A stretch of DNA of 64,000 nt from positions 62,001 to 126,000 of IMG/VR virus record IMGVR_UViG_3300032268_000832. One strand, written 5' to 3'. The position numbers were made by a program, and so were the translations under genes. Shown piece by piece: positions 27,895 to 64,000 of this stretch (position 1 is the first letter of the stretch; every line of letters begins with the position of its first letter). The notes under the pieces were generated by a model, which was not told the DNA's origin, did no database searches, and worked only from the letters and a program-made list of their open reading frames with translations.

Positions 27895-28394
27895 TATATA
27901 TTTTTATTTTTAGGTTTATTTTTTTTAGCTTCTATAGCTTTTTTTAATTCATCTAATTGTTCATCTGATAAATTACTATCTTCTATTGAGTCAACAAGTT
28001 TAGCTACTTTAGGATTATAGTTTTTATCGGTAACGTCATTTGTTAACTTTTTTTTAACCAAATCCTCAATAATTTCATCTAAGTCTTTTTTAGATAGAAT
28101 TTTTTTATCTTCACTTAATTTACTAATTTGACCATAGTACATAGGTAAACCACCTGTAGTTGAACCACCAAAGCTATAAACAGCAAACCATGGTATGTTT
28201 TGTCTATATCTAGAAAAAACTTTATCTGTTGTTGTTGACTTACCTTTTTGATAATCTGAATAATCGTTAAAGGGTTTATCAACTGGTCCAGTCTCTATTT
28301 CTTTGTCTTTTACTTGGTTTCTATCACCACCATCTGAAAATATATCACCACCAACTAGTTCGTCCAATTGTTTTTTATTCATAAATCTACTCAT
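27894..28394 (-). CDS. Hypothetical late protein
   Basis: 166 aa; repeated KK.LDE motif; first gene after late motif. Confidence 0.6.
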   Translation of the reverse strand: MSRFMNKKQLDELVGGDIFSDGGDRNQVKDKEIETGPVDKPFNDYSDYQKGKSTTTDKVFSRYRQNIPWFAVYSFGGSTTGGLPMYYGQISKLSEDKKILSKKDLDEIIEDLVKKKLTNDVTDKNYNPKVAKLVDSIEDSNLSDEQLDELKKAIEAKKNKPKNKNI

Positions 28395-28408
28395 AATTTA
28401 TCTTTTCA

Positions 28409-28440
28409 TATAAATATATTGAAAACATAGAATATTTATA
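28409..28440. promoter_or_regulatory. Back-to-back divergent late promoters
   Basis: TATAAATAT 28409-28417 and ATATTTATA 28432-28440 at the strand switch. Confidence 0.7.
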
Positions 28441-28455
28441 ATAAAACATATAAAT

Positions 28456-30243
28456 ATGCCTTTTAGAACAAAATTAGACTTTTCAAGTAATAGACAAGTT
28501 AAACAATTTGAGAAAACAAAAACGATTTTATCGGGTGGTACATCATTTGGTTTAACATTTAACGATTTAACAACAGGACCAAACCCTTTAACAAGTGGTG
28601 AAACAACTAGTCAATCATTTGTTGCTAGTACATTCTCTGGAAACAGTGCGACAACAGTTTTCAATTGGTTTAACCCAGCAATGGCTTTGGCTGAACCTTA
28701 TTTTTCTGCGTTAACACCTTCAAACTCAGCGACAACACAAACAGTTGATTCTGTTTTTGGTGTTAGTAGCACAACGGTAATTGATGGGAACACAGTAGCG
28801 CTATCTTATTCTGGTGTTGGTTTTGATATAACAGCTATAGCTATGTATAGTTTAGGTGGTGGTGCTTATTCTGGTACAGTTGAAACCGAAGAATTGGTTT
28901 TTTATTCTGCTACTAGTTTAGATTATACAGGTAGAACTATATGGGTTGATGTTTCTGGAATGACTAGAACTGAAAGACTTATCGTGACTAACAGTCCACA
29001 AATTGGTTATGTTTTAACATGTAATGATTCCGAAGGTATGGCAACATGGAGCCCAGTTACTGGTGTTACTATTAGTGGTGGGTCGATATTATGGTCTTCT
29101 GGTACTGGTACTTATTCTTTAGCAGCTAAAAATCATGGTTCTGTAGCTAGTGGAGATTATTCAGTCGCTTATGGTTTTGGAACGATAGCTAGCGGTAATT
29201 ACTCACATACGGAAGGTTATTTAACTGGAGCTGGTGTTTATTCACACGCTGAAGGTTATTCTACAGAAGCTAAAGGTGATGCATCACATGCTGAAGGTAA
29301 AGAATCAATTGCTAATGGTGATTATTCACATGCTGAAGGTAGCGGTACAACTGCTGATGGTGATTATTCACATGCTGAAGGTGTTGGTAATTTTGCTATC
29401 GGTATTGGTAGTCATGCTGAAGGTGGGTATAGTTTTAAAACTGGGTATTTACCAACTACTGCAACAACTGATAGTTCACACGCTGAAGGTGTTGGAACAA
29501 TAGCTAGTGGTGTTGGTAGCCATGCTGAATGTTACAACACTAAAGCAACTGGTGATGCATCACATGCTGAAGGTGGTGGTACAACTGCTAGTGGTGAATA
29601 TTCACATTCTGAAGGTTTTTTTACTATAGCTAGAGGCAATAATTCACATGCTGAAGGTTCAAATACTATAGCTAGTGGTAGTACAACACATGCTGAGGGT
29701 CAAGGGACAATAGCTAATGGTGATGCTAGTCATGCTGAAGGTTGGTATACGAGAGCGACTGGTACAACATCACACGCTGAAGGTTGGAATACGATAGCTA
29801 GTGGTTTTGCATCACATTCTGAAGGTTTTTTTACTATAGCTAGTAATACTGGTTCACACGCTGAAGGTTCTGGGACAACAGCTAGTGGTATTGCTAGTCA
29901 TGCTGAAGGTGGTGCAACAATAGCTAGCGGTAATTATTCACATGCTAGTGGTTCAGGTTCAACAGCTAGTGGTAATTATTCATTTGTTGGTGGGTTAAAT
30001 TCTAGGGCTTTAGCTGATTTTTCTTTTGTGCATGGTGAGCAGTCAGTTGTTGATAGCGGTGCGACGAATTCAATAGTATTAGGTGCTGGTATTTCAGGTA
30101 CTACTTCAGATACTTTATATACTAATACTTTAAATTTACAGTCAGTACTTGTTGCCGCTGATAACGCAGCAGCTATAGGTCTTGGTTTAGAAGTTGGTAC
30201 AGTTTACAGAACATCAGCAGGTCAATTAATGATTAGATATTAA
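28456..30243 (+). CDS. Fibre/adhesin with YadA-head-like SHAEG repeats
   Basis: About 18 ~14-aa repeats (A.G..SHAEG..T.); C-terminal ADNAAA.GLGLEVGTVYRT motif. Confidence 0.75.
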   Translation: MPFRTKLDFSSNRQVKQFEKTKTILSGGTSFGLTFNDLTTGPNPLTSGETTSQSFVASTFSGNSATTVFNWFNPAMALAEPYFSALTPSNSATTQTVDSVFGVSSTTVIDGNTVALSYSGVGFDITAIAMYSLGGGAYSGTVETEELVFYSATSLDYTGRTIWVDVSGMTRTERLIVTNSPQIGYVLTCNDSEGMATWSPVTGVTISGGSILWSSGTGTYSLAAKNHGSVASGDYSVAYGFGTIASGNYSHTEGYLTGAGVYSHAEGYSTEAKGDASHAEGKESIANGDYSHAEGSGTTADGDYSHAEGVGNFAIGIGSHAEGGYSFKTGYLPTTATTDSSHAEGVGTIASGVGSHAECYNTKATGDASHAEGGGTTASGEYSHSEGFFTIARGNNSHAEGSNTIASGSTTHAEGQGTIANGDASHAEGWYTRATGTTSHAEGWNTIASGFASHSEGFFTIASNTGSHAEGSGTTASGIASHAEGGATIASGNYSHASGSGSTASGNYSFVGGLNSRALADFSFVHGEQSVVDSGATNSIVLGAGISGTTSDTLYTNTLNLQSVLVAADNAAAIGLGLEVGTVYRTSAGQLMIRY

Positions 30244-34077: not shown

Positions 34078-37000
34078 ATGAGCCATACTGAACAAAAAGT
34101 TAGCAATGAAAGAATAGAATCTTTCTTACAAGGTAGTGACCCTCAAAAATATATTGTCGCTGTTGAGTCTTATTATGATAAACCTTACGTATCATTAGTA
34201 GTTAATGATGTAGAGGAAGGTAATAAACGAATAGAGGAACACAATTTCCAACCATTTCTTTGGTTTAAAGAAGATGTGACACAATATCTTTATCAAGGAA
34301 AACGAATGAAAGTTATTGAGGCTAGTAAACATTTTGGTGTTAAAATCACCAAATTAAGAACATGGTCTGAAGATGGTTTTATTCCTGATAGGATGGAAAA
34401 TGGTTATATTTATATGGCTAAGTGTAAAAAAAACTCTAACGATTTAATTAATTTTTTTAAAAACGGTGGTGTCGATATCTTTAGTAAAGAACACCAAAAA
34501 TCTTTTATCATGTTCAGCCCTACTGAACAATTTTTAATTCAATCAGGTAAGCGTTTATTCAAAGGGTTTGAGGATTACGATGATTTGCATAGATTACAAT
34601 TTGACTTGGAAACCGAGGGGTTATTTGCAACTAGAGATGCAATATTTCAAATCGGTGTTAAAGACAATAAGGGTAACGAAGCGGTTATAGAAACAATAGG
34701 TGATTCACCTAAAGATAAACGTGAAAGTGAACGTCAAAATATTATTAAATTCTTTAAAATAATAGAATTTTTAAAACCAGACATTATTGCTGGTTACAAT
34801 TCTGAAAATTTTGACTGGCCTTTTATATTTGAGCGCGCCGAAAGACTTGGATTACCAGTTACTGAGGTTGCAATTACTCTTAGCAGAGCATCAAAGATTA
34901 AAAGAAAACCAGCAACACTTAAATTAGGTGGTGAAACAGAAGCTTATAATCAAACACATATGTTTGGTTATAATATTTTGGATATTTCACATGCTGTTCG
35001 TAGAGCAATGGCTATCAACTCTGAGATTAAGTCTTGGGGATTGAAGTATATTACACAATATTCTGAAATTGCAAAACCTAATCGTGTTTATGTGCCAGGT
35101 GATAAAATAAACGCAACATGGGCCGATAAAGAAAACAAATACGCGTTTAATGATACCAATGGTGATTGGTATAAAATAACTGAGACAAATCAAATACAAG
35201 ATGGTTATGTGGTTAAAACAGGTGCTTTCATTGTTCAAAGATATTTGATTGATGACCTTTGGGAGACTGAACAAATTGATAATATTTTCAATCAAGCTAG
35301 TTTTCTTATCGCAAAAATTTTACCTACTACGTTTCAACGTTCATCAACTATGGGAACGGCTGGACAATGGAAACTTATTATGGCCGCATGGTCATATGAA
35401 AATGGATTGGCTATTCCAGAAACACAACCTAAAAGAGATTTTACTGGTGGTTTGTCACGTTTGTTAGAAGTAGGTTTTGCTAGAAACGTATATAAATTAG
35501 ACTTTGCTGCATTATACCCTAAAACACAGTTAACTTGGGATATTTTCCCAGAATTAGATATAACTGGTGTGATGAAAGGTACATTAACATATGTTGTGGA
35601 TACGCGTGATAAATACAAGTTCTTAAATGGTAAAGAGAAGGGTGTTTTTAAATCTTTGGAGAAAAAATTAAAAGAAGAAAGTGCTAATATGTCACAAGCT
35701 GAGATTGATAAACTTAAAAAAGAAATTCAAGAGCATAAGGCTTTGGCTAACTTGTATGATAAAAAACAGTTACCTCTTAAGATTCTTGCAAACTCATGGT
35801 TTGGTTCATATGGGGCACCATATATCTTTAACTGGGGTGATACAGATTCAGCTGAAGAAACAACATGTCGTGGTCGTCAATACTTGAGGCTTATGGTACG
35901 TCATTTTACGGAAAAATACGGATTTAGAGCGCTAGTATTAGACACTGATGGTTGTAACTTTGCAGCTCCTGATAATTTAAACGATTTTTCATATGTTGCT
36001 AACGGTACTCATTGGAAAACTGAGGGTGAAGGTGGTAAAACACTTTATGGTATCGATGCTGTATTGGCTGAATTTAACGAAACATTTATGATTGGCCGAA
36101 TGGGTCTGGATTTAGATGACGTGTGTACCTCTACAATTAATTTTGCTAGAAAGAATTATGCTAATGATATTGGTGGTAAGATTAAATTAGTAGGAAACTC
36201 TATTAAATCTAAGAAAATGCCAGTTTATATTGAGGAATTCTTAAATAAGGGTATTAGAATGTTATTAGATGGTGATGGTTATTCATTTATTAACCATTAT
36301 TATGAATACGTTGATAAAATATACAACTATAAAATCCCATTGATTAAAATGGCTTCTAAATCTAAGGTTAAATTATCAATAACTGATTATAAGAAAAAAG
36401 CAAAAATGAAAAACAAAGCTGGTAACCCTATGCCAAAACAAGCGCACATGGAATTAGCTATGTTAAATAATTTGGATACTAGTTTAGGTGATGTATTGTA
36501 TTATATAAACACTGGTACTTCTAAATCTCAAGGTGATTTGCAAACTATCTGGGAAAATAAAATGACCAAAAAACAGCTTGAAAAATGGTATATTAACAAT
36601 GGTCAAGACTCTACTCCACCTGAAGCTAAAAGCACTCTTAAAATAAACTGTAAGCTAATCATGCCTGATACGGTTGAGCGAGATTTTGAGGCTATTAAAG
36701 AACTTGAAATGTTGAAAAAAGCTGTTGAAAAAGTAGGTGAAGAAGGTGGTGATGTTAACCAATTTGATGCTAGAATAAAAGAACTGGAATCTACTTTATT
36801 TACTGATGAATACAACGTTGCTAGATATTTAGAAGCTTTCAATAAAAAAGTTAAACCATTGTTAGTTTGTTTTAGTCCAGAAATCAGAGACCAAATTCAA
36901 TTATCTATAATTAAAATTAAAGATAAGGAAACTAAAAAAACATTTGAGGTCTTAAAGGATAGAATTATTTTTACTAAATCTCAATGTAGTTTAATTTCAG

Positions 37001-37839
37001 GTAAACCTTTTAGACCAGTCGACCAAGATTCATATGAGGATTTAATGGTTATGGAAGATAAAGAGATTAAGTTCTGGGAACGCGTTAATAAAGTCCCAAA
37101 TAATATGGAACTATCTGAGTGGGAAGAAATCAAAATAGATTACTATGAAAGAATGAGAATAGCTAAAGAAGAGGGTGTCGTAGAAGAAAAAGAAAAATTA
37201 GATGAAATCTTTAAAAGATTAGAAGTTAAGGATTTTTCACTTATAAGAAAAAAAGGTGAATTACCTATCGATATTTTTATATTATGTGATATTGGTGAGA
37301 ACGGAACTTTGATTTCTAGAAAGTGGGGAGAAACTTTGTGTCATATTAGAGAAATCTTTAAATATGAAAAAGAATCTAGAGAAAGAGATAATTTTTACAA
37401 ACTTAAAAAATATTCAGATGGAGATAATCGTTATGATTTATGGCTTGATTATTTAGAAGAATGTAGAATCATGAGTGGTGAAACAATTAATATTAACACA
37501 GAAGAAGTTGAAATTGATGATTTGACTTTATTGGGTAAATTAAAAGAAAAAGCTGATAGTATTGTAATTGAAAAACCAGTCATTGAAAAGAAAAAGAGAA
37601 CTTACTCTGAAAATGAGGATGATGAAGAAGAATTAGAAGAAGATGAAGAAGGAAACCTTATCAGAAGTGATGAAGAATTATTGTTAGATGATGAATTTGA
37701 TGATACATTCAGTGAAGTACCTGAAGGTTACGTTGTGGATGAAACAGCAATTGTAAATGTTATGGATAAAGAAGCTGAACTTCATGAAACTCCTGAAGTT
37801 GTAGTTAAAGAAGAATCAGAAGAAGATTGGGGTTTTTAA
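34078..37839 (+). CDS. Family B DNA polymerase
   Basis: Exo FDLET, YNSENFD, YLIDD; pol LDFAALYP, KILANSWFG, LDTDG, RKNYA. Confidence 0.92.
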   Translation: MSHTEQKVSNERIESFLQGSDPQKYIVAVESYYDKPYVSLVVNDVEEGNKRIEEHNFQPFLWFKEDVTQYLYQGKRMKVIEASKHFGVKITKLRTWSEDGFIPDRMENGYIYMAKCKKNSNDLINFFKNGGVDIFSKEHQKSFIMFSPTEQFLIQSGKRLFKGFEDYDDLHRLQFDLETEGLFATRDAIFQIGVKDNKGNEAVIETIGDSPKDKRESERQNIIKFFKIIEFLKPDIIAGYNSENFDWPFIFERAERLGLPVTEVAITLSRASKIKRKPATLKLGGETEAYNQTHMFGYNILDISHAVRRAMAINSEIKSWGLKYITQYSEIAKPNRVYVPGDKINATWADKENKYAFNDTNGDWYKITETNQIQDGYVVKTGAFIVQRYLIDDLWETEQIDNIFNQASFLIAKILPTTFQRSSTMGTAGQWKLIMAAWSYENGLAIPETQPKRDFTGGLSRLLEVGFARNVYKLDFAALYPKTQLTWDIFPELDITGVMKGTLTYVVDTRDKYKFLNGKEKGVFKSLEKKLKEESANMSQAEIDKLKKEIQEHKALANLYDKKQLPLKILANSWFGSYGAPYIFNWGDTDSAEETTCRGRQYLRLMVRHFTEKYGFRALVLDTDGCNFAAPDNLNDFSYVANGTHWKTEGEGGKTLYGIDAVLAEFNETFMIGRMGLDLDDVCTSTINFARKNYANDIGGKIKLVGNSIKSKKMPVYIEEFLNKGIRMLLDGDGYSFINHYYEYVDKIYNYKIPLIKMASKSKVKLSITDYKKKAKMKNKAGNPMPKQAHMELAMLNNLDTSLGDVLYYINTGTSKSQGDLQTIWENKMTKKQLEKWYINNGQDSTPPEAKSTLKINCKLIMPDTVERDFEAIKELEMLKKAVEKVGEEGGDVNQFDARIKELESTLFTDEYNVARYLEAFNKKVKPLLVCFSPEIRDQIQLSIIKIKDKETKKTFEVLKDRIIFTKSQCSLISGKPFRPVDQDSYEDLMVMEDKEIKFWERVNKVPNNMELSEWEEIKIDYYERMRIAKEEGVVEEKEKLDEIFKRLEVKDFSLIRKKGELPIDIFILCDIGENGTLISRKWGETLCHIREIFKYEKESRERDNFYKLKKYSDGDNRYDLWLDYLEECRIMSGETININTEEVEIDDLTLLGKLKEKADSIVIEKPVIEKKKRTYSENEDDEEELEEDEEGNLIRSDEELLLDDEFDDTFSEVPEGYVVDETAIVNVMDKEAELHETPEVVVKEESEEDWGF

Positions 37840-50246: not shown

Positions 50247-50248
50247 AT

Positions 50249-50398
50249 TTATTCACCGTATAAGTCTTTTTTAGGTGTGCAACCCTCTCTAATCAGTTTT
50301 TCCACAAACTGAAACATCTTTAACCCATTTTCTTCACAATATTTTTTAAGAAGTTCATGGGTTAAAGGTGTTATTTTTATGTTTTTATCCCTTTTCAT
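50249..50398 (-). CDS. Ribbon-helix-helix DNA-binding protein (49 aa, not in ORF track)
   Basis: MKRDKNIKITPLTHELLKKYCEENGLKMFQFVEKLIREGCTPKKDLYGE: strand-helix-G-helix pattern. Confidence 0.7.
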   Translation of the reverse strand: MKRDKNIKITPLTHELLKKYCEENGLKMFQFVEKLIREGCTPKKDLYGE

Positions 50399-50414
50399 AT
50401 GTCTTTTACCTATA

Positions 50415-50445
50415 AGTATGATAAAAATATGAAAAAAATCATACT
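50415..50445. promoter_or_regulatory. Putative RHH operator
   Basis: AGTATGAT-N15-ATCATACT inverted repeat plus a central TATGA box. Confidence 0.5.
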
Positions 50446-50492
50446 AAAAGTGATTATTATTTTTTTACAAACCCACTTTTGAAAAATCAGTG

Positions 50493-50500
50493 ATATTTAT
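50493..50500 (+). promoter_or_regulatory. Putative late promoter ATATTTAT
   Basis: 50 nt upstream of sheath ATG. Confidence 0.6.
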
Positions 50501-50550
50501 TATAAAACAAAACATTAAATTTAATAATATCACTTAAAAAGTAAAAAAAT

Positions 50551-53406
50551 ATGGCAACAAAAGTGTTCGTAAGTCCAGGGGTTTATACCTCAGAAAAAGA
50601 CTTATCATTTATTACACGTCAAATCGGTGTTACAACTTTAGGTTTAGTTGGGGAGACTACAATAGGTCCTGCATTTCAACCAATTTTTGTAGGCAATTAT
50701 GGCGAATTCCAATCTTTTTTTGGTGGCCAAAATGCTACTAGAGTAAAAGATAACGGTGCACCAAGATATGAATTACCTTATATCGCTAAATCGTATTTAT
50801 CTCAATCAAACCAATTATTCGTAACTAGAGTATTAGGGTTTTCTGGATATGATGCAGGTAAAGCATGGGGTATAACATTACAAGGTACATTAGACCCTGA
50901 TACTGTTGGGGTAACTTCATCAGGAACCACATATAGTCCTATAATTTCATATACAGCAATAACTGCTACTAATGAGGTTGTTAGTGTTGTTTCAAACGTA
51001 CCTTTAATTCAACAATTATATAATGATGGTACTTTAGTAAATCCATTGAATATATTGGGTACTTTCAGTGCTACAGGTAATGTCGCATCTATAGATGTAG
51101 AGTACAAAAAAACAGGTGCTACTTATAGTGGTGTATCATTTAATTTATTTGTTAATTCAATCGGTACTACTGGTTTATATACAACTGGTACAACAACAGG
51201 TGCTACAGTTACTTATTCTGGTTCAGCATATTCTGATGTTGAAAACAAGTTGGTAACTTTATTACGTTCTAGAGGTACAATAAATTCAGCTACACAGTTA
51301 CCTAACTTTGAAGTTAGTGCGGCTACAGGTAATTTAGGTTTTAACCCTACTTATACCGCTGCAAATAGTGACGCTTTAGGTGATTTCGCGTTGACTGGTA
51401 CATCTAATACTCAAGGTGCTTTTAGTTATGTATTATCGTTTGATAAAACAAAACAAAACTACATTACTAGAGTATTGGGTAGAGAAGCTCAAGATGGAAC
51501 AACAGCAATTTTTGTTGAAGAGTTCTATAACAATATGTTTACTGATTTAAACGCTGCTGAAAAAATAGCTGGTATTAATTTAAGTCTTGTGAATTATAGT
51601 GGAGAATTTTCTGATTATCAAAAAGAATACCAACCAGCAGTTACACCTTATGTAGTTTCTGAATTACGTGGTACTAACTTATTTAGATTATTTAGATTCT
51701 GGACAATATCAGACGGTAACGCTGCTAACGAACAATTTAAAATATCTATTAGAAATATTAATTTAGATTCTGGTGAATTTGATGTTGTTGTTAGAGGATT
51801 CTACGATACTGATGCTCAACCAACTGTATTGGAAACATTCAGTCGTTGTACTATGAGCCCAACATCTAATAATTACGTTGCTAGAAGAATAGGTACACTT
51901 GATGGTGAATACCCATCTAAATCATCTTATGTTCTTATTGAGATGGATACTGATTCAGATACTAGCGATATGGTTCCAGCTGGTTTCGTAGGTTTCCCAA
52001 TTAGAGATTACCAAGAAAATAGCAATACAACAGTTGTTAACCCTGCTATTGAGTATAAAAAAGCTTATGGTACATTTGAAAATAAACGTAAATATTATTT
52101 AGGTTTATCTGAAACTGTAGGTATTGATTCGGATTTCTTTGATTATAAAGGGGTTCCTGTAGGACAAACTTATGATATGTGGACTGGTCTTACAAAAGGT
52201 TTCCATATGGACGTTAATGCTACTGGCGCTACAATCGACAATGTATTTGTTGTGATTAACAATAGTGGTGATACATATAATCCAATATTCTTATTTGATA
52301 CTGGTGACGCTGCGTTTAACAGTACTGCTGTAGCAGATGCTAATAATCCATATAATAAAATATATGCGCGTAAATTTACATTTGCACCTTATGGTGGTTT
52401 TGATGGATGGGATATATACAGAACTAGAAGAAGTAACTTAGACTCATTCTTAATCAACGGTACTAATGGTGTTAAAGGTTTAAATAGTGGTGCTTTTACT
52501 AATAGAACACTTACAAACGGTGATTTAGGTATTAATTCAGATTACTACGCATATTTAGAAGCTATTTGGACATTTAAAAACCCAGAAGCAGTTAATATTA
52601 ATGTGTTTGCAACTCCAGGTATTGATACGTTTGATAACAGTAACTTAATTGAGGCTGCTATTGAAATGGTTGAAACTGATAGAGCTGACTCATTATATAT
52701 TTTAACAACCCCAGATACAAATGCTGGTGGTGAGGTTATGTCAGCTGAAGAAATTTCAGATTTCTATTCTGATGGTTCTTTCGATAGTAACTACTCATGT
52801 ACTTATTGGCCATGGATTCAAGTAAACGATACTGAAAATAATGTTTACATTTGGATGCCGCCAACAAGAGATGTAGTTAGAAACATCGCGTTAACTGACA
52901 ACATTGCATTCCCATGGTTTGCTGTTGCTGGTATTCAAAGAGGTGATGTTGACTGTATTCAAGCTCGTAAAAAACTTACTCTTTCTGAAAGAGATGCGTT
53001 ATACGAAAATAGAGTTAACCCAATTGCAACTTTCACATCAGATGGTGTTAAAATCTGGGGTAATAAAACTCTTCAAGTTAAAGAATCTGCTCTTGACAGA
53101 ATCAACGTTAGAAGACTATTGTTACAAGCTAGAAAACTTATCTCTGCTGTTTCTATCAGATTGTTATTTGAACAAAACGATAGTGTTGTAAGAAATCAAT
53201 TCTTATCATTGGTTAACCCAATCTTAGATAATATTAGAGCTGAAAGAGGTCTTACAGACTTTAGAGTGGTTCTTTCAAATGACCCAGAAGATATCGATAG
53301 AAATCAACTTACAGGTCAGATATTCTTGAAACCAACTAGAGCGTTAGAGTTCATCCAATTAGAGTTCGTAATTATGAACACTGGTGCATCTTTCGATAAC
53401 ATCTAA
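50551..53406 (+). CDS. Contractile tail sheath protein (gp18-like)
   Basis: SPGVYTSEKD, G.T..GPAF.P, YWPW, PWFAVAG..RG, NPI, WGNKTL, RINVRRL, PTRALEFI. Confidence 0.95.
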   Translation: MATKVFVSPGVYTSEKDLSFITRQIGVTTLGLVGETTIGPAFQPIFVGNYGEFQSFFGGQNATRVKDNGAPRYELPYIAKSYLSQSNQLFVTRVLGFSGYDAGKAWGITLQGTLDPDTVGVTSSGTTYSPIISYTAITATNEVVSVVSNVPLIQQLYNDGTLVNPLNILGTFSATGNVASIDVEYKKTGATYSGVSFNLFVNSIGTTGLYTTGTTTGATVTYSGSAYSDVENKLVTLLRSRGTINSATQLPNFEVSAATGNLGFNPTYTAANSDALGDFALTGTSNTQGAFSYVLSFDKTKQNYITRVLGREAQDGTTAIFVEEFYNNMFTDLNAAEKIAGINLSLVNYSGEFSDYQKEYQPAVTPYVVSELRGTNLFRLFRFWTISDGNAANEQFKISIRNINLDSGEFDVVVRGFYDTDAQPTVLETFSRCTMSPTSNNYVARRIGTLDGEYPSKSSYVLIEMDTDSDTSDMVPAGFVGFPIRDYQENSNTTVVNPAIEYKKAYGTFENKRKYYLGLSETVGIDSDFFDYKGVPVGQTYDMWTGLTKGFHMDVNATGATIDNVFVVINNSGDTYNPIFLFDTGDAAFNSTAVADANNPYNKIYARKFTFAPYGGFDGWDIYRTRRSNLDSFLINGTNGVKGLNSGAFTNRTLTNGDLGINSDYYAYLEAIWTFKNPEAVNINVFATPGIDTFDNSNLIEAAIEMVETDRADSLYILTTPDTNAGGEVMSAEEISDFYSDGSFDSNYSCTYWPWIQVNDTENNVYIWMPPTRDVVRNIALTDNIAFPWFAVAGIQRGDVDCIQARKKLTLSERDALYENRVNPIATFTSDGVKIWGNKTLQVKESALDRINVRRLLLQARKLISAVSIRLLFEQNDSVVRNQFLSLVNPILDNIRAERGLTDFRVVLSNDPEDIDRNQLTGQIFLKPTRALEFIQLEFVIMNTGASFDNI

Positions 53407-59307: not shown

Positions 59308-61776
59308 ATGGCTGAAATGAATGAAGAAGAATTAAAAGCATTCGAAAAAGCTTTAGCTAAGGCTAGGGCTGAATTAAAAGAAATGTATAACATCCAGAAA
59401 GAAATAAATAGTGGATGGGATGGGTTTACAAAGGGTGTTAAAGATGTTAGTAATTTAACTTCTGATATTAAAAATGTTAATAAACAAATATTAGAATTAG
59501 AGAAAGACCAAACAGAAGAAGGTAAATTAAAAGTAGCCGCATTAAAAAAAGAACTTGCTTTATTAGAAAAGAATAGAGATGTTATTAAACAAACTATAAA
59601 AGACGTTAATAAATTTAAATTAGCTGGTGGTACAGCAATGGCTGGTGTTGTTAAAGGTGCTTCTAATCTTGATAAAATACCTAATTTTATTACAGGTAAA
59701 TTAGGCCTTTTAAAAGGTCTTTTTGAAATGGACAAAGCCATTAGAGTAACCGTTAATCAAATGGGTACTCTTGGTAAACAAAGTGATATAGTAAGACAAA
59801 ATATAAAATCAGCCGCTGTAAACACAGTATCCTTTGGTGTTGGTATTAAAGAGATTGCTGAAATTCAAGCACAATACGCAGAGTCTTTAGGTAGAAATGT
59901 ATTAGTTTCTCAGAAGGGTCTTGAATCAATTGCTGAAATGGGTAAATCTAGTGGTCTAGGTATTGAAGGTGCAACAGAAATGGCTGCTCAGTTTGACAAA
60001 ATGGGTGTGTCAGCAGATAGGACTGGAGAATTTATGGAAGAAACTTTAAATAATTCTAGCGCTATGGGGTTAAACACTACCAAAGTAATGAAGAATTTAA
60101 ACCAAAACTTTAAAATGCTTAATAAGTATCGTTTTAAAGATGGTATTAAGGGTATCACTAAAATGGCTCAAATGGCGACTAAATTAGGTGTTGAAATGGA
60201 TTTTGCTGCTGGTATGTCTGATAAGCTTTGGAACGTTGAAGGTGCTGTTGAGATGTCGGCACAATTAAATGTTATGGGTGGTGCATGGGCTCAAATGGCC
60301 GACCCTTTCAAATTAATGTATCAAGCGCGTAATGACATACAAGGTTTAACAGAAGATATTGCTAAGGCTGCATCCCAATCAATGACTTTCGCTAAAGATG
60401 GTAGTATTGAAACTAACGCTATGGAAATGCATAGGTTAAAAATAATTGCGGAGCAAACTGGTCTTGAATATGAAAAATTGGTTGAGTTAGGTAAAACTCA
60501 ATTTAAAATGGGTAAAATTGAAATGCAAGCTTCTAACTTACCTGATGACGTAAAAGAGTTTGTTGCAAATACAGCTGAATTTAAAAACGGTAAAGCTTAT
60601 ATCCAAGTTGAAAGTGGTGATAAAAAATTATTAAGTCATATAACAAAATCTGATAGAGATTATTTAAAACGTCAAGTAGAAGAGAAAAAAACAATGAAAG
60701 AAAGGGCAGATGCTGCACAATCTTTTGATGAAACGTTAAATAACTTGTTAAACATGGTTAAAATTTATATGATGCCAATTGTTGAAGGGTTATCAAACGT
60801 ATTAAAACCAGTTATAGATGATTTAATGGGAGAAAAAGGTACGGCCTTTAAAAACGAATTAAAAAGTTTAGGTGAACAACTTGGTAATTTTATTTCAGGT
60901 GCAGCTGAATGGGTTAAACCTTTAATACAAATGGCTGTCGCTTTAGGTCCTAAAGGTATATTTTATACATGGTTAACAGGTAAAGCTCTTATGGGTTTAT
61001 TTGAAGTGGGGAAATGGTTTTTAAATGGATTGTCCTTATCTAAAGGATTTTTAATGGGAACTAAAGGTTTTATGGGTGGTTCTGGTAATAGTACACCTAA
61101 CACCACTACTTCTAAAGGTTCTGGTAAATTTGGAAAATTTGGGTCAACAAAGGGTGGTATGTCTTTTGGTAAATCTTTAATGAGAGGTTTAGGTAGTGGT
61201 GCTGTTTTAGGTGTTGGTGGTGCCGCTATGGATTATGGTAGAAGTAAAATGGATAACCCAGAAAGTACTGGTGGTAAATGGCTTGGGGCTGGAGCTAAAG
61301 CAGCTGAGTTTGCTAGTTATGGTGCTATGATAGGTAGTATTATACCAGGTTTAGGGACTGGAGCTGGTGCTATAATAGGTGGTTTGATTGGTGGTGGTAA
61401 AGGTATCTATGATGAATTTTTTGATAAACCACAAAACGATGTTAAATTTCCAAAATTAGGACCTAACCATTCTAAAGGTAGAATGTTAACACAAGGAGGT
61501 AAAATAACACCAATTGATAACAAAGATGAATTATTAGCTATGAAACCTGGTGGTGTTGTTGATAAGACTCTAAATAACACAAACACTGGGATTTCTTCGA
61601 CAAAAATTGAATTTGGTGATTTAAATATTACTGGAGAAATCAAGATTAATTTACCAGGTGGAACACAAATTGGTTCTGAATTGTTAAAAAGTTCTGAATT
61701 TAAATCATCAATTACTAGAGTTGTTCAATCTCAACTTGAAAAAAATATAAATGGTAAAAATTCTGATAGAAAATAA
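59308..61776 (+). CDS. Tape measure protein
   Basis: 822 aa, helical Ala/Met-rich body, Gly-rich hydrophobic C-terminal segments, follows chaperone genes. Confidence 0.75.
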   Translation: MAEMNEEELKAFEKALAKARAELKEMYNIQKEINSGWDGFTKGVKDVSNLTSDIKNVNKQILELEKDQTEEGKLKVAALKKELALLEKNRDVIKQTIKDVNKFKLAGGTAMAGVVKGASNLDKIPNFITGKLGLLKGLFEMDKAIRVTVNQMGTLGKQSDIVRQNIKSAAVNTVSFGVGIKEIAEIQAQYAESLGRNVLVSQKGLESIAEMGKSSGLGIEGATEMAAQFDKMGVSADRTGEFMEETLNNSSAMGLNTTKVMKNLNQNFKMLNKYRFKDGIKGITKMAQMATKLGVEMDFAAGMSDKLWNVEGAVEMSAQLNVMGGAWAQMADPFKLMYQARNDIQGLTEDIAKAASQSMTFAKDGSIETNAMEMHRLKIIAEQTGLEYEKLVELGKTQFKMGKIEMQASNLPDDVKEFVANTAEFKNGKAYIQVESGDKKLLSHITKSDRDYLKRQVEEKKTMKERADAAQSFDETLNNLLNMVKIYMMPIVEGLSNVLKPVIDDLMGEKGTAFKNELKSLGEQLGNFISGAAEWVKPLIQMAVALGPKGIFYTWLTGKALMGLFEVGKWFLNGLSLSKGFLMGTKGFMGGSGNSTPNTTTSKGSGKFGKFGSTKGGMSFGKSLMRGLGSGAVLGVGGAAMDYGRSKMDNPESTGGKWLGAGAKAAEFASYGAMIGSIIPGLGTGAGAIIGGLIGGGKGIYDEFFDKPQNDVKFPKLGPNHSKGRMLTQGGKITPIDNKDELLAMKPGGVVDKTLNNTNTGISSTKIEFGDLNITGEIKINLPGGTQIGSELLKSSEFKSSITRVVQSQLEKNINGKNSDRK

Positions 61777-61827
61777 TATTGATTATCAAGTAGTTATAAT
61801 ATAATATAAAAAAATAGTTTAATATAC

Positions 61828-61857
61828 TTGATTTTGTCAAAAAAAACCGTATTTTTG
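61828..61857 (+). promoter_or_regulatory. Bacteroidota sigmaA-type promoter TTG-N19-TATTTTTG with no downstream CDS before a terminator
   Basis: Consensus match in a 260 bp intergenic region. Confidence 0.55.
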
Positions 61858-61879
61858 TATATATAAAATTTAAAATAAA

Positions 61880-61919
61880 TAATAATAAAATATATAATTA
61901 TAATAATAAAATATATAAT
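61880..61919 (+). repeat. Two exact 19 bp direct repeats, 21 bp period
   Basis: TAATAATAAAATATATAAT at 61880-61898 and 61901-61919. Confidence 0.8.
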
Positions 61920-61940
61920 AATAACTTTTTAATAAAAATT

Positions 61941-61962
61941 GGCACATATTGTGCCTTTTTTT
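61941..61962 (+). terminator. Intrinsic terminator
   Basis: ggcaca-tat-tgtgcc followed by T7. Confidence 0.75.
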
Positions 61963-62011
61963 GTTTTAATATGTTTTAAACATTTATTTTTATAATTTTT
62001 TTGGTAGTTTA

Positions 62012-62020
62012 ATATTTATA
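62012..62020 (+). promoter_or_regulatory. Putative late promoter ATATTTATA
   Basis: 15 nt upstream of ATG 62036. Confidence 0.65.
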
Positions 62021-62035
62021 TATAAAAGAAATATT

Positions 62036-64000
62036 ATGCCATTATTTTATGACACGGCTTCGCCAACACCAACTTCTAGAAATACAATCAATAGTGTTTC
62101 AATTGATATTAGAGATTTTCTATTACAAAAAAATTTATTACCAACATATCCAACATTATCAACTAGTTTAAATGGTAGTCCACGTATTGGTCAACCAGTA
62201 TTAGATACTGAAACTAATTTCCTTAATTTTTACCCTCAACAAAGACTTGAAGGTAATACATCAAGTTTAGACATACTAGGAAGCATTTTAAACGGTCAAG
62301 GTGTTGGTTTGGGTGCTGGAGGTTCAATCGAACCTAATTTTGACGTTAGAGGGTCTCTATTAGGTCGTGTGTTAGGTTCTACAGGTATTTTAAGTGATAC
62401 TAAGATAGGTACTATTGGTGCAAAGCAATTAGCGTTAGCTTTAGCTAATAATGCAGCGTTCAATGTTCAACAAGAAATATTAGGTACATTAAATGTAAGA
62501 GAAAACATTTATTCACTTATCAAAGATGGAGATTTAGCTGGTTTCAGACCTAATTATAAAATCACGGTACCAAAATCTACAGGTGGTCAAATATTAAATG
62601 GTATCACAAGAGTATTAGGGTTTCAAATACCAAGAAGTTATTTAGATGAAAGTGGTTCTATATTCCAAACAGAAAATGGTGATGCGGCAAATATAGTAAG
62701 AGCTAATGCTATGATTGAAAACACTGGTAAGGGTCAAGTAGCTGCGTTAATTTCGTCTATGTTGAATAATTTAAGTGCTAATGAAGTTAATGGAAGTGTA
62801 GAAATAAATCCTTTTAGAAGTGGTTATTCACCAGCATTCAATGATAAAAAAGGAGAACCGATGAGTGACCCTAAAATTTATGCTTATTATCTAACCAATG
62901 GTCAAGGAACTGTTAATGGTGGTGTAAGTAAATTATTAGGTAATATAGGTGATTATATGCCTAGTCTTAGTTATCTTAGAGAACAAATGACTAGTGATTC
63001 TGGTTTTAAATCACCTGAAGAATTGTTTATTGGTACTGGTCAATTTTTTAATTCTGGATACGATAAAAGAACTATTAGTAGAATAGGATTTTCATGGGCT
63101 AGTGAACAACCAGATGCTGTTAACTCTTTAGCTGGTTTAGATAATACTTCAGATTTTGAATTTTTAACAGGTGTTGATACTAATAACATAAAAGGTGATA
63201 AAAAATCATTATTGGTTAAAACACAGAAATTATTCAATAGTAAAGGTATGAAAAACATTGTCACTGTTAAAGGTGATATGGAAAAAAATTCAACACAAAT
63301 ACAAACAGCTAATGGTAATGGTTTTTCTAAAGGTAGCGCTGTTTTAAAAGCAGAAATGTATGATTTAGAAAAAGGTATTTATATAGGTAAAGAAAATGCC
63401 ACAGCTGATGAAACATATTGTAGAAGTTGGACAACGTTAGACAGATATGATAGTGTAAGTAAATTGATTAGAAACAAGGCGTTATATACAGACCCAAATG
63501 TTGCGTATAGATTTCAAACACAAAACAGTGTGTTAGATGGTCCTTTTGTTAAAATAGCACCATACGCAAATGAAATTGAAGACCCTAAAAAATTCATGTT
63601 ATCAATTGAAAATCTTGCTTGGAAAGATGAAGTTCAAAATTTACCAGAATGTGAACAAGGTCCAGGTGATTTAATATCAGGTGAAAGAGGTAGAATTATG
63701 TGGTTCCCACCATATGATATCCAATTTAGTGAAAATAACACAGTCAATTGGGAAGAAACTAATTTCATTGGTAGAGGTGAACCTATATATACATATAATA
63801 ATACAAAAAGAAGTGGAAATTTATCTTTTAAAATAGTTGTTGACCACCCAAGTTATTATAATGCTTTTAATGCTAGAAAAAACCAAACAGGTTCACCTGA
63901 TGATAATTATATAGCATCATTTTTTGCTGGTTGTGTTGATGTTGATAGAAGATGGGCAGATAAATTAATGTCAACACAAACCGTTAATGAAATAATATCT
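62036..64000 (+). CDS. Partial (runs off window) large baseplate protein with tube-initiator-like domain
   Basis: Not in the ORF track. MPLFYDTASP... in frame with the window end; WFPPYDIQFSE...NWEETNFIGRGEPIYTYNNTKRSGNLSF. Confidence 0.65.
   Translation, partial: MPLFYDTASPTPTSRNTINSVSIDIRDFLLQKNLLPTYPTLSTSLNGSPRIGQPVLDTETNFLNFYPQQRLEGNTSSLDILGSILNGQGVGLGAGGSIEPNFDVRGSLLGRVLGSTGILSDTKIGTIGAKQLALALANNAAFNVQQEILGTLNVRENIYSLIKDGDLAGFRPNYKITVPKSTGGQILNGITRVLGFQIPRSYLDESGSIFQTENGDAANIVRANAMIENTGKGQVAALISSMLNNLSANEVNGSVEINPFRSGYSPAFNDKKGEPMSDPKIYAYYLTNGQGTVNGGVSKLLGNIGDYMPSLSYLREQMTSDSGFKSPEELFIGTGQFFNSGYDKRTISRIGFSWASEQPDAVNSLAGLDNTSDFEFLTGVDTNNIKGDKKSLLVKTQKLFNSKGMKNIVTVKGDMEKNSTQIQTANGNGFSKGSAVLKAEMYDLEKGIYIGKENATADETYCRSWTTLDRYDSVSKLIRNKALYTDPNVAYRFQTQNSVLDGPFVKIAPYANEIEDPKKFMLSIENLAWKDEVQNLPECEQGPGDLISGERGRIMWFPPYDIQFSENNTVNWEETNFIGRGEPIYTYNNTKRSGNLSFKIVVDHPSYYNAFNARKNQTGSPDDNYIASFFAGCVDVDRRWADKLMSTQTVNEIIS

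What the first reader, a model, noticed from the sequence alone, without database searches (positions are those of the whole stretch)
61777..62035. Non-coding unit: palindrome, host-type promoter, AT-only direct repeats, terminator
Seen in the largest gap of the window: near-palindrome TTGATTATCAA (61779-61789), a sigmaA consensus (61828-61857), about 80 nt of almost pure A/T with two exact 19-mers at 21 bp (two-turn) spacing, then a hairpin plus T7. No ORF. The next gene has its own late box. Established: T4 origins are a promoter plus a downstream unwinding element forming an R-loop. Inference: a transcription-primed replication origin or a ~100 nt early sRNA.
Basis: partly seen in the sequence, partly recalled or inferred. 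Interest (0 to 1): 0.6.

Follow-up and report, generated by a model that had tools for sequence, protein, structure and literature searches.

The report
Early promoter firing into AT-only tract
In an uncultured 306-kb freshwater phage, a host-type promoter between the tape-measure gene and the next tail gene fires into the most easily melted, almost G/C-free stretch of the genome. Dozens of distant relatives keep this promoter-plus-AT-tract pair at the same spot, so it is a real cis-acting element, most likely a transcription-activated replication origin, although a ~100-nt A/U-only RNA is not excluded.

Summary
After the tape-measure stop codon come these parts, in order:
- a perfect 11-bp palindrome;
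- a promoter at 61828-61857;
- an 83-bp tract with a single G/C;
- a hairpin followed by T7;
- two late boxes;
- the next gene.

The promoter is not a generic sigmaA type. It matches the Bacteroidota consensus TTG-N19-TAnnTTTG exactly, and about 100 such promoters occur in this genome. The tract is the longest A/T run and the least stable duplex in all 306 kb.

The promoter-plus-AT-tract pair sits right after the tape-measure gene in relatives whose flanking protein is only 35-70% identical. Its composition is conserved; its sequence and repeat units are not. What follows the tract varies:
- a terminator (this lineage; hairpin shows compensatory changes);
- a small UVR-motif ORF plus terminator;
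- the late promoter directly.

So the conserved core is transcription into an AT-only tract, not a defined RNA. My best reading (about 0.4) is a promoter plus DNA-unwinding element, working like T4 oriF/oriG. The main rival (about 0.25) is an unstructured ~100-nt A/U-only early RNA. GC skew gives no origin signal.

The parts
59308..61776 (+). Tape-measure-like late gene (822 aa). Its stop codon is the fixed left border of the unit.
   Evidence: phrog_167 tail length tape measure, E 1.7e-9. ORF list.
61779..61789 (.). Perfect 11-bp palindrome TTGATTATCAA (TTGATAATCAA in most relatives). Presumed binding site for a dimeric protein, centred about 80 bp before the predicted transcription start.
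   Evidence: Sequence. It is kept in 9 lineages, always starting 49 nt before the -33 TTG (50 nt in one lineage; 61 in one that has a 12-nt insert carrying a second palindrome). The three other copies in the genome lie inside genes.
61828..61857 (+). Host-type (Bacteroidota housekeeping sigma) early promoter: -33 TTG at 61828-61830, 19-nt spacer, -7 element TATTTTTG at 61850-61857. Predicted start is near 61862.
   Evidence: CTTGA and GTAnnTTTG are invariant in alignment A1. The genome holds 117 TTG-N18-20-TAnnTTTG sites against 26 in shuffles, mostly intergenic on the coding strand. Consensus, and start site 4-5 nt after the -7 element, from PMC6847099.
61858..61940 (+). AT-only tract: 83 nt (50 A, 32 T, 1 C, 0 G). 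It would form the transcribed body of the unit, and it is the least stable duplex in the genome.
   Evidence: Longest A/T run in 306 kb. Nearest-neighbour stability z = 4.5-4.6 for 60-80-bp windows, next best 3.5-3.6. The top A/T segment of the locus lies at this slot in 59 of 62 related loci.
61879..61919 (+). Two exact 20-nt direct repeats (61879-61898 and 61900-61919), period 21. A slippage product, not a conserved feature.
   Evidence: Relatives carry other tandem units: 8 nt about 12 times in L014, 13 nt four times in L013, 10 nt in L009.
61941..61962 (+). Intrinsic terminator: stem GGCACA/TGTGCC, loop TAT, then T7. It ends the early transcript and also late read-through from the tape-measure operon.
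   Evidence: In 12 lineages all 60 stem cells pair and 4 of 5 pairs show compensatory changes; slid controls pair at 22-68%. It is absent from the distant clade.
61981..61990 (+). Conserved box CATTTATTTT, 31 nt before the late box. Either an upstream late-box variant or the distal half of a two-part late promoter.
   Evidence: Invariant in A1. Same spacing in distant relatives.
62010..62028 (+). Late promoter box of the downstream gene (ATATTTAT at 62012-62019).
   Evidence: Recurs 10-25 nt before late structural genes. 58 of 133 copies lie before gene starts, against 3.7 expected.
62036..64000 (+). Large conserved tail-region gene. It totals 1301 aa and runs past the window end to genome position 127944. 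It has no family assignment.
   Evidence: No Pfam or PHROG hit. 596 or more relatives in IMG/VR.

Best explanation
The gap holds a conserved cis-acting early unit. A promoter read by the unmodified RNA polymerase of a Bacteroidota host fires, from about 61862, into an 83-bp tract that contains almost no G or C and is the easiest place in the whole genome to melt. In this lineage the tape-measure operon's intrinsic terminator stops the polymerase about 100 nt later, so early transcription does not enter the late tail gene.

The likeliest function is a promoter plus downstream DNA-unwinding element. Early transcription opens the AT-only duplex and leaves RNA on it, creating an entry point and primer for the phage replisome, as at T4 oriF/oriG. 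The upstream palindrome would be the site of a protein that tunes this promoter.

Shown: the parts, their conservation, and the fact that only the promoter and the A/T composition are under selection.

Inferred: promoter activity, R-loop or unwinding, and any replication start.
For: 1. The promoter is an exact TTG-N19-TAnnTTTG match. It belongs to a set of about 100 such sites in this genome (117 against 26 in shuffles). Only 10 of 382 genes have an SD-like motif, and A is enriched at -3 and at -11 to -14. This points to a Bacteroidota host.
2. The tract is unique in the genome: the longest A/T run and the least stable duplex. In a complete 362-kb relative, the pattern '-7 element followed by 40 or more A/T' hits only this one slot.
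3. Position and composition are deeply conserved. The top A/T segment of the locus sits right after the tape-measure gene in 59 of 62 loci, with the neighbouring protein down to about 35% identity. The tract sequence and its repeat units differ in every lineage.
4. The promoter and the tract stay together while the downstream partner changes. It is a terminator here, a 163-186-aa UVR-motif ORF plus terminator in L016/L020/L023/L024/L029/L040, or the late promoter directly in the distant clade.
5. Over 48 distinct lineages the tract shows no strand bias beyond the genome background (G 163 vs C 162; A/T skew +0.07). That fits a duplex property better than an RNA property.
6. [quoted passage not shown] T4 oriF also lies between baseplate genes and a small gene whose mRNA is the primer, like the ORF-bearing form here. 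The phage has a T4-type sheath, a gp32-like SSB and a family B polymerase.
Against: - GC skew follows gene orientation only and shows no inflection at the site.
- The T4 oriF unwinding element is only 70% A+T, so a T4-type element does not need about 99% A+T. Something more demanding may be selected here.
- There are no iterons and no initiator gene next to the unit. Pfam models for gp59 and UvsW found nothing, although their controls were silent too.
- An intrinsic terminator right after the tract releases the RNA, which is not required for an R-loop primer and suits a discrete RNA product.
- The site lies in the middle of a late structural block, far from the replication genes.
Confidence: 0.4

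Rival explanations
1. The product matters, not the DNA. An abundant ~100-nt early RNA is made of about 80 nt of unstructured A/U plus the terminator hairpin. It acts in trans, for example as a decoy for a host protein that binds A/U-rich single-stranded RNA (ribosomal protein S1 or the 30S subunit, or an RNase).
For: - It has its own strong host-type promoter. In relatives this is the CTTGAC class, which in this genome otherwise precedes tRNA arrays.
- It has an intrinsic terminator with compensatory changes and no ORF.
- In the terminator-bearing lineages the promoter-to-hairpin distance is fairly narrow, mostly 80-92 nt.
- In the close clade the transcript strand is A-rich and nearly G-free.
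- The RNA body is predicted to be unstructured.
- Freshwater metatranscriptomes hold small parts of the 3-kb stretch; which part is unknown.
Against: - No part of the RNA body is conserved in sequence, so there is no seed. Only the first ~11 nt are shared, and only by close relatives.
- No Rfam family reaches its threshold.
- The fold is not better than shuffles (z -1.76).
- In many relatives the same promoter and tract have no terminator and run into an ORF or the late gene, so no discrete RNA is defined.
- The strand biases vanish across the wider set.
- An A/U-only single strand would be a prime RNase substrate.
Confidence: 0.25
2. The AT tract is an architectural upstream element (bendable or meltable DNA, or a protein-binding platform) that boosts the late promoter of the large downstream gene. 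The early promoter is incidental.
For: - In the distant clade the tract abuts the conserved CATTTATTTT and late-box pair directly.
- That pair is invariant across all relatives.
- The tract is always upstream of this one gene.
Against: - In six lineages a 500-600-nt ORF plus a terminator separate the tract from the late promoter, yet the tract stays attached to the early promoter.
- Other late genes of this genome use the same late box without any such tract.
- The inward-pointing promoter is itself conserved: at least 27 of 46 lineages by a conservative scan, against 1-10% of random windows.
Confidence: 0.12
3. The unit is an emptied early gene cassette (promoter, long leader, terminator) left after loss of the small UVR-motif ORF. 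The A/T tract is kept long only by replication slippage, with no function of its own.
For: - ORF-bearing forms are nested among ORF-less forms in the quick tree.
- The window genome has no full-length homologue of that ORF.
- The tracts are full of lineage-specific tandem repeats.
- The slot takes up other cargo: a nucleotidyltransferase gene in L063.
Against: - ORF-less units keep an intact consensus promoter, a fixed 49-nt palindrome spacing and 87-100% A+T over 64-123 nt in at least 15 lineages whose flanking proteins have diverged to 45-70% identity. Neutral DNA in a 31% G+C genome would not stay G/C-free.
- The distant clade has the promoter and tract without ever showing the ORF.
Confidence: 0.08

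Closest known systems
Phage T4 origins oriF (uvsY) and oriG (gene 34): promoter plus downstream unwinding element, R-loop primed
   Same: - A unit of about 100 bp: a promoter active before late times, followed at once by an A+T-rich tract whose sequence is free (PMC3016281).
- It is embedded among tail and baseplate genes.
- In T4 oriF the origin transcript is also the mRNA of a small gene, like the ORF-bearing form in relatives.
- The transcript strand is A-rich.
   Different: - T4 uses a MotA-dependent middle promoter; here the promoter is a plain host-consensus Bacteroidota type.
- The T4 element is about 70% A+T; here it is 99%, and in relatives up to 260 bp long.
- Here a terminator closes the unit and a conserved palindrome lies upstream.
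- No replication data exist for this element.
Phage T7 primary origin (tandem phage promoters followed by an A+T-rich region). From my own knowledge; no paper retrieved.
   Same: Promoter(s) firing into an A+T-rich stretch of several tens of bp, with the transcripts used as primers.
   Different: T7 uses its own RNA polymerase and promoters, and a shorter, less extreme A+T stretch. This resemblance is recalled, not tested here.
Rho-independent, promoter-to-terminator small RNAs of phages and bacteria
   Same: Own promoter, no ORF, hairpin plus U-run with covariation, predicted length about 100 nt.
   Different: There is no conserved sequence or structure in the body and no Rfam match. The terminator is missing in many relatives. 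An A/U-only body has no described counterpart that I know of.
Bacteroidota housekeeping-sigma promoters (-33 TTTG / -7 TAnnTTTG)
   Same: Exact -7 element with no G at the two free positions, TTG at -33 with a 19-nt spacer, and many sister promoters in the same genome.
   Different: None at sequence level. Activity and start site are not measured.
Phage 'moron'-type early cassettes (promoter, ORF, terminator) inserted in late operons
   Same: A host promoter and a terminator inside a late structural operon. Relatives carry an ORF in the same frame of parts.
   Different: Here the cassette has no ORF. Its long AT-only leader is the conserved part, whereas other early genes of this genome have 15-25-nt leaders.

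Membership tests
T4 oriF/oriG-type origin (promoter + downstream unwinding element) | A pre-late promoter directing transcription into the element | tested here: met
   Consensus host promoter at 61828-61857, conserved in relatives and pointing into the tract. Tested by sequence only; activity was not measured.
T4 oriF/oriG-type origin (promoter + downstream unwinding element) | An A+T-rich, helically unstable tract immediately downstream, with interchangeable sequence | tested here: met
   83 bp at 99% A+T, the least stable duplex of the genome. Composition is conserved and sequence is not.
T4 oriF/oriG-type origin (promoter + downstream unwinding element) | A persistent R-loop, with RNA used as the leading-strand primer | not testable with these tools
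   Needs R-loop or nuclease footprinting in infected cells.
T4 oriF/oriG-type origin (promoter + downstream unwinding element) | Early replication starts here (copy-number peak, or autonomous replication of a cloned fragment) | tested here: inconclusive
   GC skew tracks gene orientation and shows no inflection.
T4 oriF/oriG-type origin (promoter + downstream unwinding element) | A T4-type replisome able to use R-loops (polymerase, SSB, helicase loader, RNase H) | tested here: inconclusive
   Family B polymerase and gp32-like SSB are present. gp59 and UvsW models found nothing, but their controls were silent. The record is estimated 86% complete.
Trans-acting small RNA with intrinsic terminator | Own promoter and no ORF | tested here: met
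Trans-acting small RNA with intrinsic terminator | A defined 3' end (hairpin + U-run) conserved across homologues | tested here: not met
   Present, with compensatory changes, in the window's clade. Absent in the distant clade, and displaced behind an ORF in six lineages.
Trans-acting small RNA with intrinsic terminator | A conserved seed or structure in the RNA body | tested here: not met
   No conserved columns inside the tract. Fold z -1.76. No Rfam family above threshold.
Trans-acting small RNA with intrinsic terminator | Detected as a discrete transcript | not testable with these tools
Bacteroidota -33/-7 promoter | -7 element TAnnTTTG (TAHHTTTG) and -33 TTG at the usual distance | tested here: met
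   TATTTTTG at 61850-61857 and TTG at 61828-61830 with a 19-nt spacer. Consensus from PMC6847099. 25 sites on the + strand have N19 and 60 have N20.
Type III toxin-antitoxin RNA repeats (ToxI-like) | An array of conserved RNA repeats, then a terminator, then a toxin gene | tested here: not met
   There are only two 20-nt copies, with unrelated units in relatives. The downstream gene is a 1301-aa late gene with its own promoter.

The most novel reading that the evidence does not exclude
The unit makes a start-codon-free, structure-free A/U-only 'leader without a gene'. Bacteroidota ribosomes select mRNAs by unstructured A-rich leaders instead of Shine-Dalgarno pairing. An abundant RNA of this kind could therefore act as a decoy that titrates 30S subunits, S1 or an RNase early in infection. 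That would be a phage take-over device specific to this phylum. A second variant is also not excluded: the opened tract could double as a clamp-loading 'enhancer' for the adjacent late promoter.
Probability: 0.1. Interest if true: 0.85.

Novelty: new variant of a known kind. Interest (0 to 1): 0.55.

Why it matters
Huge phages of freshwater Bacteroidota are known almost only from metagenomes, and nothing is known about how they start replication or time their genes.

This element is the only non-coding feature that is unique in the genome and held at one fixed slot across a very large, deeply diverged group (596 or more IMG/VR relatives of the neighbouring gene). It combines a textbook host promoter with the most meltable DNA of the genome.

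- If it is the origin, it gives a portable marker for replication starts, and for in-situ growth estimates of these phages from coverage.
- If the RNA is the active part, it would be an unusual A/U-only regulator.
- Either way, the promoter set found here ties the phage group to Bacteroidota hosts without any cultured isolate.

Tried and rejected
- Near-identical and protein-level searches of cultured phage genomes with the tape-measure gene and the downstream gene found nothing. No annotated relative could be consulted. Only the polymerase and the sheath have remote cultured kin.
- An Rfam scan with permissive thresholds gave only sub-threshold chance hits.
- Read evidence: runs were found, 14 lake or freshwater DNA runs and 5-6 metatranscriptomes holding small shares. 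There is therefore no transcript or coverage evidence.
- Whole-genome cumulative GC skew mirrors gene orientation only.
- Start-codon or G avoidance in the tract looked real in the close clade but disappears over 48 lineages. I dropped it as an argument.
- The palindrome as a recurring operator is rejected. The three other genomic copies are inside genes, about what chance predicts.
- The two-helical-turn repeat spacing as a functional feature is rejected, because relatives have 8-, 10- and 13-nt units.
- A pseudo-ToxI antitoxin array is rejected (see the membership test).
- A minus-strand promoter at 61840-61811 from the generic scan is rejected, because its -35 hexamer is not conserved.
- A hidden peptide gene is rejected. 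There is no sense ORF of 20 aa or more, and the tract has no G for a start codon.
- Papers on the T7 origin could not be retrieved, so that comparison rests on memory.
- The careful tree search did not finish. Only the quick tree was used.

Full report
CONTEXT

The window is positions 62001-126000 of a single 306,463-bp IMG/VR virus record. The record has 31% G+C and is estimated 86% complete. It is a contractile-tailed jumbo phage:
- T4-type sheath at 50551-53406;
- tape-measure-like protein at 59308-61776 (phrog_167);
- family B DNA polymerase at 34078-37839;
- gp32-like SSB further downstream.

No cultured phage carries a homologue of the tape-measure gene or of the gene after the gap. IMG/VR holds at least 596 relatives of the latter. 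The stretch itself is found in lake and freshwater metagenomes from 17 studies.

THE OBSERVATION

- stop codon of the tape-measure gene at 61774-61776;
- perfect palindrome TTGATTATCAA at 61779-61789;
- TTG at 61828-61830 and TATTTTTG at 61850-61857, 19 nt apart;
- an 83-nt tract at 61858-61940 with 50 A, 32 T, one C and no G;
- two exact 20-mers at 61879-61898 and 61900-61919 inside the tract;
- hairpin GGCACA-TAT-TGTGCC at 61941-61955 followed by seven T;
- a conserved box CATTTATTTT at 61981-61990;
- the late box ATATTTAT at 62012-62019;
- the ATG at 62036.

There is no sense ORF of 20 codons or more.

The tract is far beyond chance. Its pure A/T run of 67 nt is the longest in the genome. 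The next is 43 nt, and about 2e-5 runs of 60 nt or more are expected. By nearest-neighbour energies it is the least stable 60-80-bp duplex, at z 4.5-4.6 against 3.5-3.6 for the runner-up.

Minor corrections:
- The repeats are 20-mers, not 19-mers.
- The 304-nt gap before the sheath gene is larger.

WHAT KIND OF PROMOTER

The invariant letters in the alignment of ten lineages are CTTGA and GTAnnTTTG. That is the Bacteroidota housekeeping-sigma consensus, -33 TTTG / -7 TAnnTTTG. No G occurs at the two free positions, and the start lies 4-5 nt after the element (PMC6847099).

The genome contains 117 TTG-N18-20-TAnnTTTG sites against 26 in shuffles. Most are intergenic and on the coding strand. 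They are dense at 1-13 kb and 186-306 kb and rare in the late structural block.

Only 10 of 382 called genes have a Shine-Dalgarno-like motif. A is enriched at -3 and at -11 to -14, as in that phylum.

The predicted start is near 61862, and with the terminator this gives an RNA of about 100 nt.

Late genes use a different signal, ATATTTAT(A/T), 10-25 nt before the ATG and often just after a hairpin terminator. 58 of its 133 copies lie before gene starts, against 3.7 expected.

COMPARATIVE ANATOMY

The gap is 257-290 nt in ten relatives whose neighbouring protein is 51-90% identical. It aligns block by block:
- the palindrome;
- the promoter;
- a tract that keeps its A/T composition but not its sequence;
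- the hairpin;
- the CATTTATTTT box and the late box.

The palindrome starts 49 nt before the -33 TTG in nine lineages. Its other three copies in the genome lie inside genes and are chance.

The hairpin pairs in all 60 cells of 12 lineages, with compensatory changes at four of five pairs. Slid controls pair at 22-68%.

In the terminator-bearing lineages the promoter-to-hairpin distance is 64-123 nt, mostly 80-92, at 87-100% A+T.

Each lineage has its own tandem units: 21 nt twice here, 8 nt about twelve times in L014, 13 nt four times in L013, and 10 nt in L009. The tract therefore turns over by slippage while staying G/C-free.

THE DECISIVE FINDING

The decisive finding came from relatives that seemed to lack the unit. 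A degenerate search for '-7 element followed by 40 A/T', run on whole related records, hit one place in each of two such records. In both it lay 700-800 nt upstream of the gene. In a complete 362-kb relative it hit only the homologous slot.

Reading those loci shows the same promoter and a 65-95-nt AT-only tract directly after the tape-measure stop. They are followed by a 163-186-aa ORF with two UvrB/UvrC motifs (PF02151). Only then come the hairpin, the CATTTATTTT box and the late box.

- The window's genome has no full-length homologue of that ORF.
- In L063, promoter, tract and hairpin are followed by a second host promoter and a nucleotidyltransferase gene.
- In the distant clade (35-42% identity) a tract of 100-260 nt runs from a CTTGAC-type promoter straight to the CATTTATTTT box, with no hairpin.

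Overall, the highest-scoring A/T segment of the 8-14-kb locus lies at this slot in 59 of 62 loci. A tract is present for 48 of 50 distinct proteins.

On a quick tree, the no-terminator form fills the distant clade. The terminator form fills the window's half. The ORF form is nested inside the terminator form at least twice (the careful search did not finish).

A conservative scan finds a promoter-like element at the tract in at least 27 of 46 lineages, against 1-10% of random windows. Several misses are visible by eye.

The conserved core is therefore 'host-type promoter firing into an AT-only tract, right after the tape-measure gene'.

MECHANISM

Any function must work with or without a terminator and with or without an ORF behind the tract. 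It must depend on composition, not sequence, and it must need only one copy per genome.

A base-pairing sRNA fits poorly:
- there is no conserved seed;
- the fold is no better than shuffles (z -1.76);
- there is no Rfam family;
- there is no common 3' end.

An upstream enhancer of the late promoter fits poorly because the tract stays with the early promoter when an ORF separates it from the late promoter.

A neutral remnant fits poorly because G/C-free DNA, an intact consensus promoter and a fixed palindrome spacing persist across lineages whose proteins are only 45-70% identical.

A promoter plus DNA-unwinding element fits all four constraints and has a precise precedent. The minimal T4 oriF and oriG are about 100 bp. 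[quoted passage not shown] The transcript forms an R-loop that primes leading-strand synthesis (PMC3016281). T4 oriF lies between baseplate genes 26/25 and the small gene uvsY, whose mRNA is the primer. That mirrors the ORF-bearing form here.

Across 48 lineages the tract has no strand bias beyond background (G 163, C 162; A/T skew +0.07). This suits a duplex property.

RESERVATIONS

- GC skew only follows gene orientation.
- The T4 element is just 70% A+T, so the near-total exclusion of G/C here is not explained by the T4 model alone.
- There is no initiator gene or iteron nearby.
- Pfam models for gp59 and UvsW were silent, though so were their controls.
- In the window's clade the tight tract-hairpin junction and the narrow length range would also suit a discrete ~100-nt A/U-only RNA. 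In the close clade that RNA is A-rich and nearly G-free. It would come from a CTTGAC-class promoter, which in this genome otherwise drives tRNA arrays.

My estimates are 0.4 for the origin-like reading and 0.25 for an RNA-level function. An architectural role gets 0.12 and a functionless remnant 0.08. The remaining 0.15 is for something not yet thought of.

LIMITS

No expression or coverage evidence is therefore available, and both leading readings remain untested by experiment.

The comparison with the T7 origin is from memory (searches found no paper). Host assignment rests on promoter and translation-start signatures, not on an isolate.

VERDICT

This is a real and strongly conserved non-coding element. 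The promoter type, the role of the terminator and the repeat spacing need correcting.

It is best filed as a new variant of the promoter-plus-unwinding-element kind. Membership in the T4-type origin family is unproven, because the defining functional features could not be tested.

Noticed in passing
G000:C1:195587-286759 (outside the window): 38 tRNA genes in several arrays. They include suppressor-type anticodons CUA (199106-199179) and UCA (239866-239941) and two genes with odd 4-letter anticodon calls. ORFs in the window are long under the standard bacterial code.
   Followed up: no
G000:C1:1100-11100 (outside the window): About 15 near-identical copies of a ~50-nt early promoter-plus-leader cassette: TTTGGTA..., then TATATCTTTGCA, then a conserved CACAAACCAATTAAATT leader. 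Each copy sits before a small gene.
   Followed up: no
window 74617-74790 and G000:C1:136926-137333: A gp32-like SSB gene lies inside the late structural block behind two tandem host-type promoters. It is an early gene island in a late region.
   Followed up: partly
L081 versus window 59308-64000: The relative L081 has a tape-measure protein only 67% identical to the window's. Its intergenic unit and the start of the next gene are about 99% identical. This implies a recombination joint at or next to the unit.
   Followed up: partly
L016:5290-5847, L020:2506-3009, L023, L024, L029, L040: A small early protein (163-186 aa) with two UvrB/UvrC motifs occupies the slot between the AT tract and the terminator in six lineages. 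It is absent from the window's genome.
   Followed up: partly
L063:4987-5954: In a complete 345-kb relative, the tract and hairpin are followed by a second host promoter and a nucleotidyltransferase-like gene. The slot therefore collects early cargo.
   Followed up: partly
window 61981-61990 and 62012-62019: The box CATTTATTTT lies exactly 31 nt before the late box in all relatives. A few other late genes of the genome also show two late-box-like motifs in tandem. This could be a two-part late promoter or two late promoters.
   Followed up: partly
window 50247-50550: A 304-nt gap before the sheath gene, larger than the flagged gap, containing a late-box-like motif. Not examined further.
   Followed up: no
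L035-L045 (upstream of the promoter): The distant clade has a different conserved motif, TGTTAATTTTTTGTTAAA (two GTTAA half-sites 11 nt apart), where the window's clade has the TTGATAATCAA palindrome. A different regulator site may sit at the same position.
   Followed up: no
window 28394-28456: A 61-nt divergent switch between a 39-gene minus-strand block and the plus-strand block. The cumulative GC-skew minimum of the window lies here and simply follows gene orientation.
   Followed up: no
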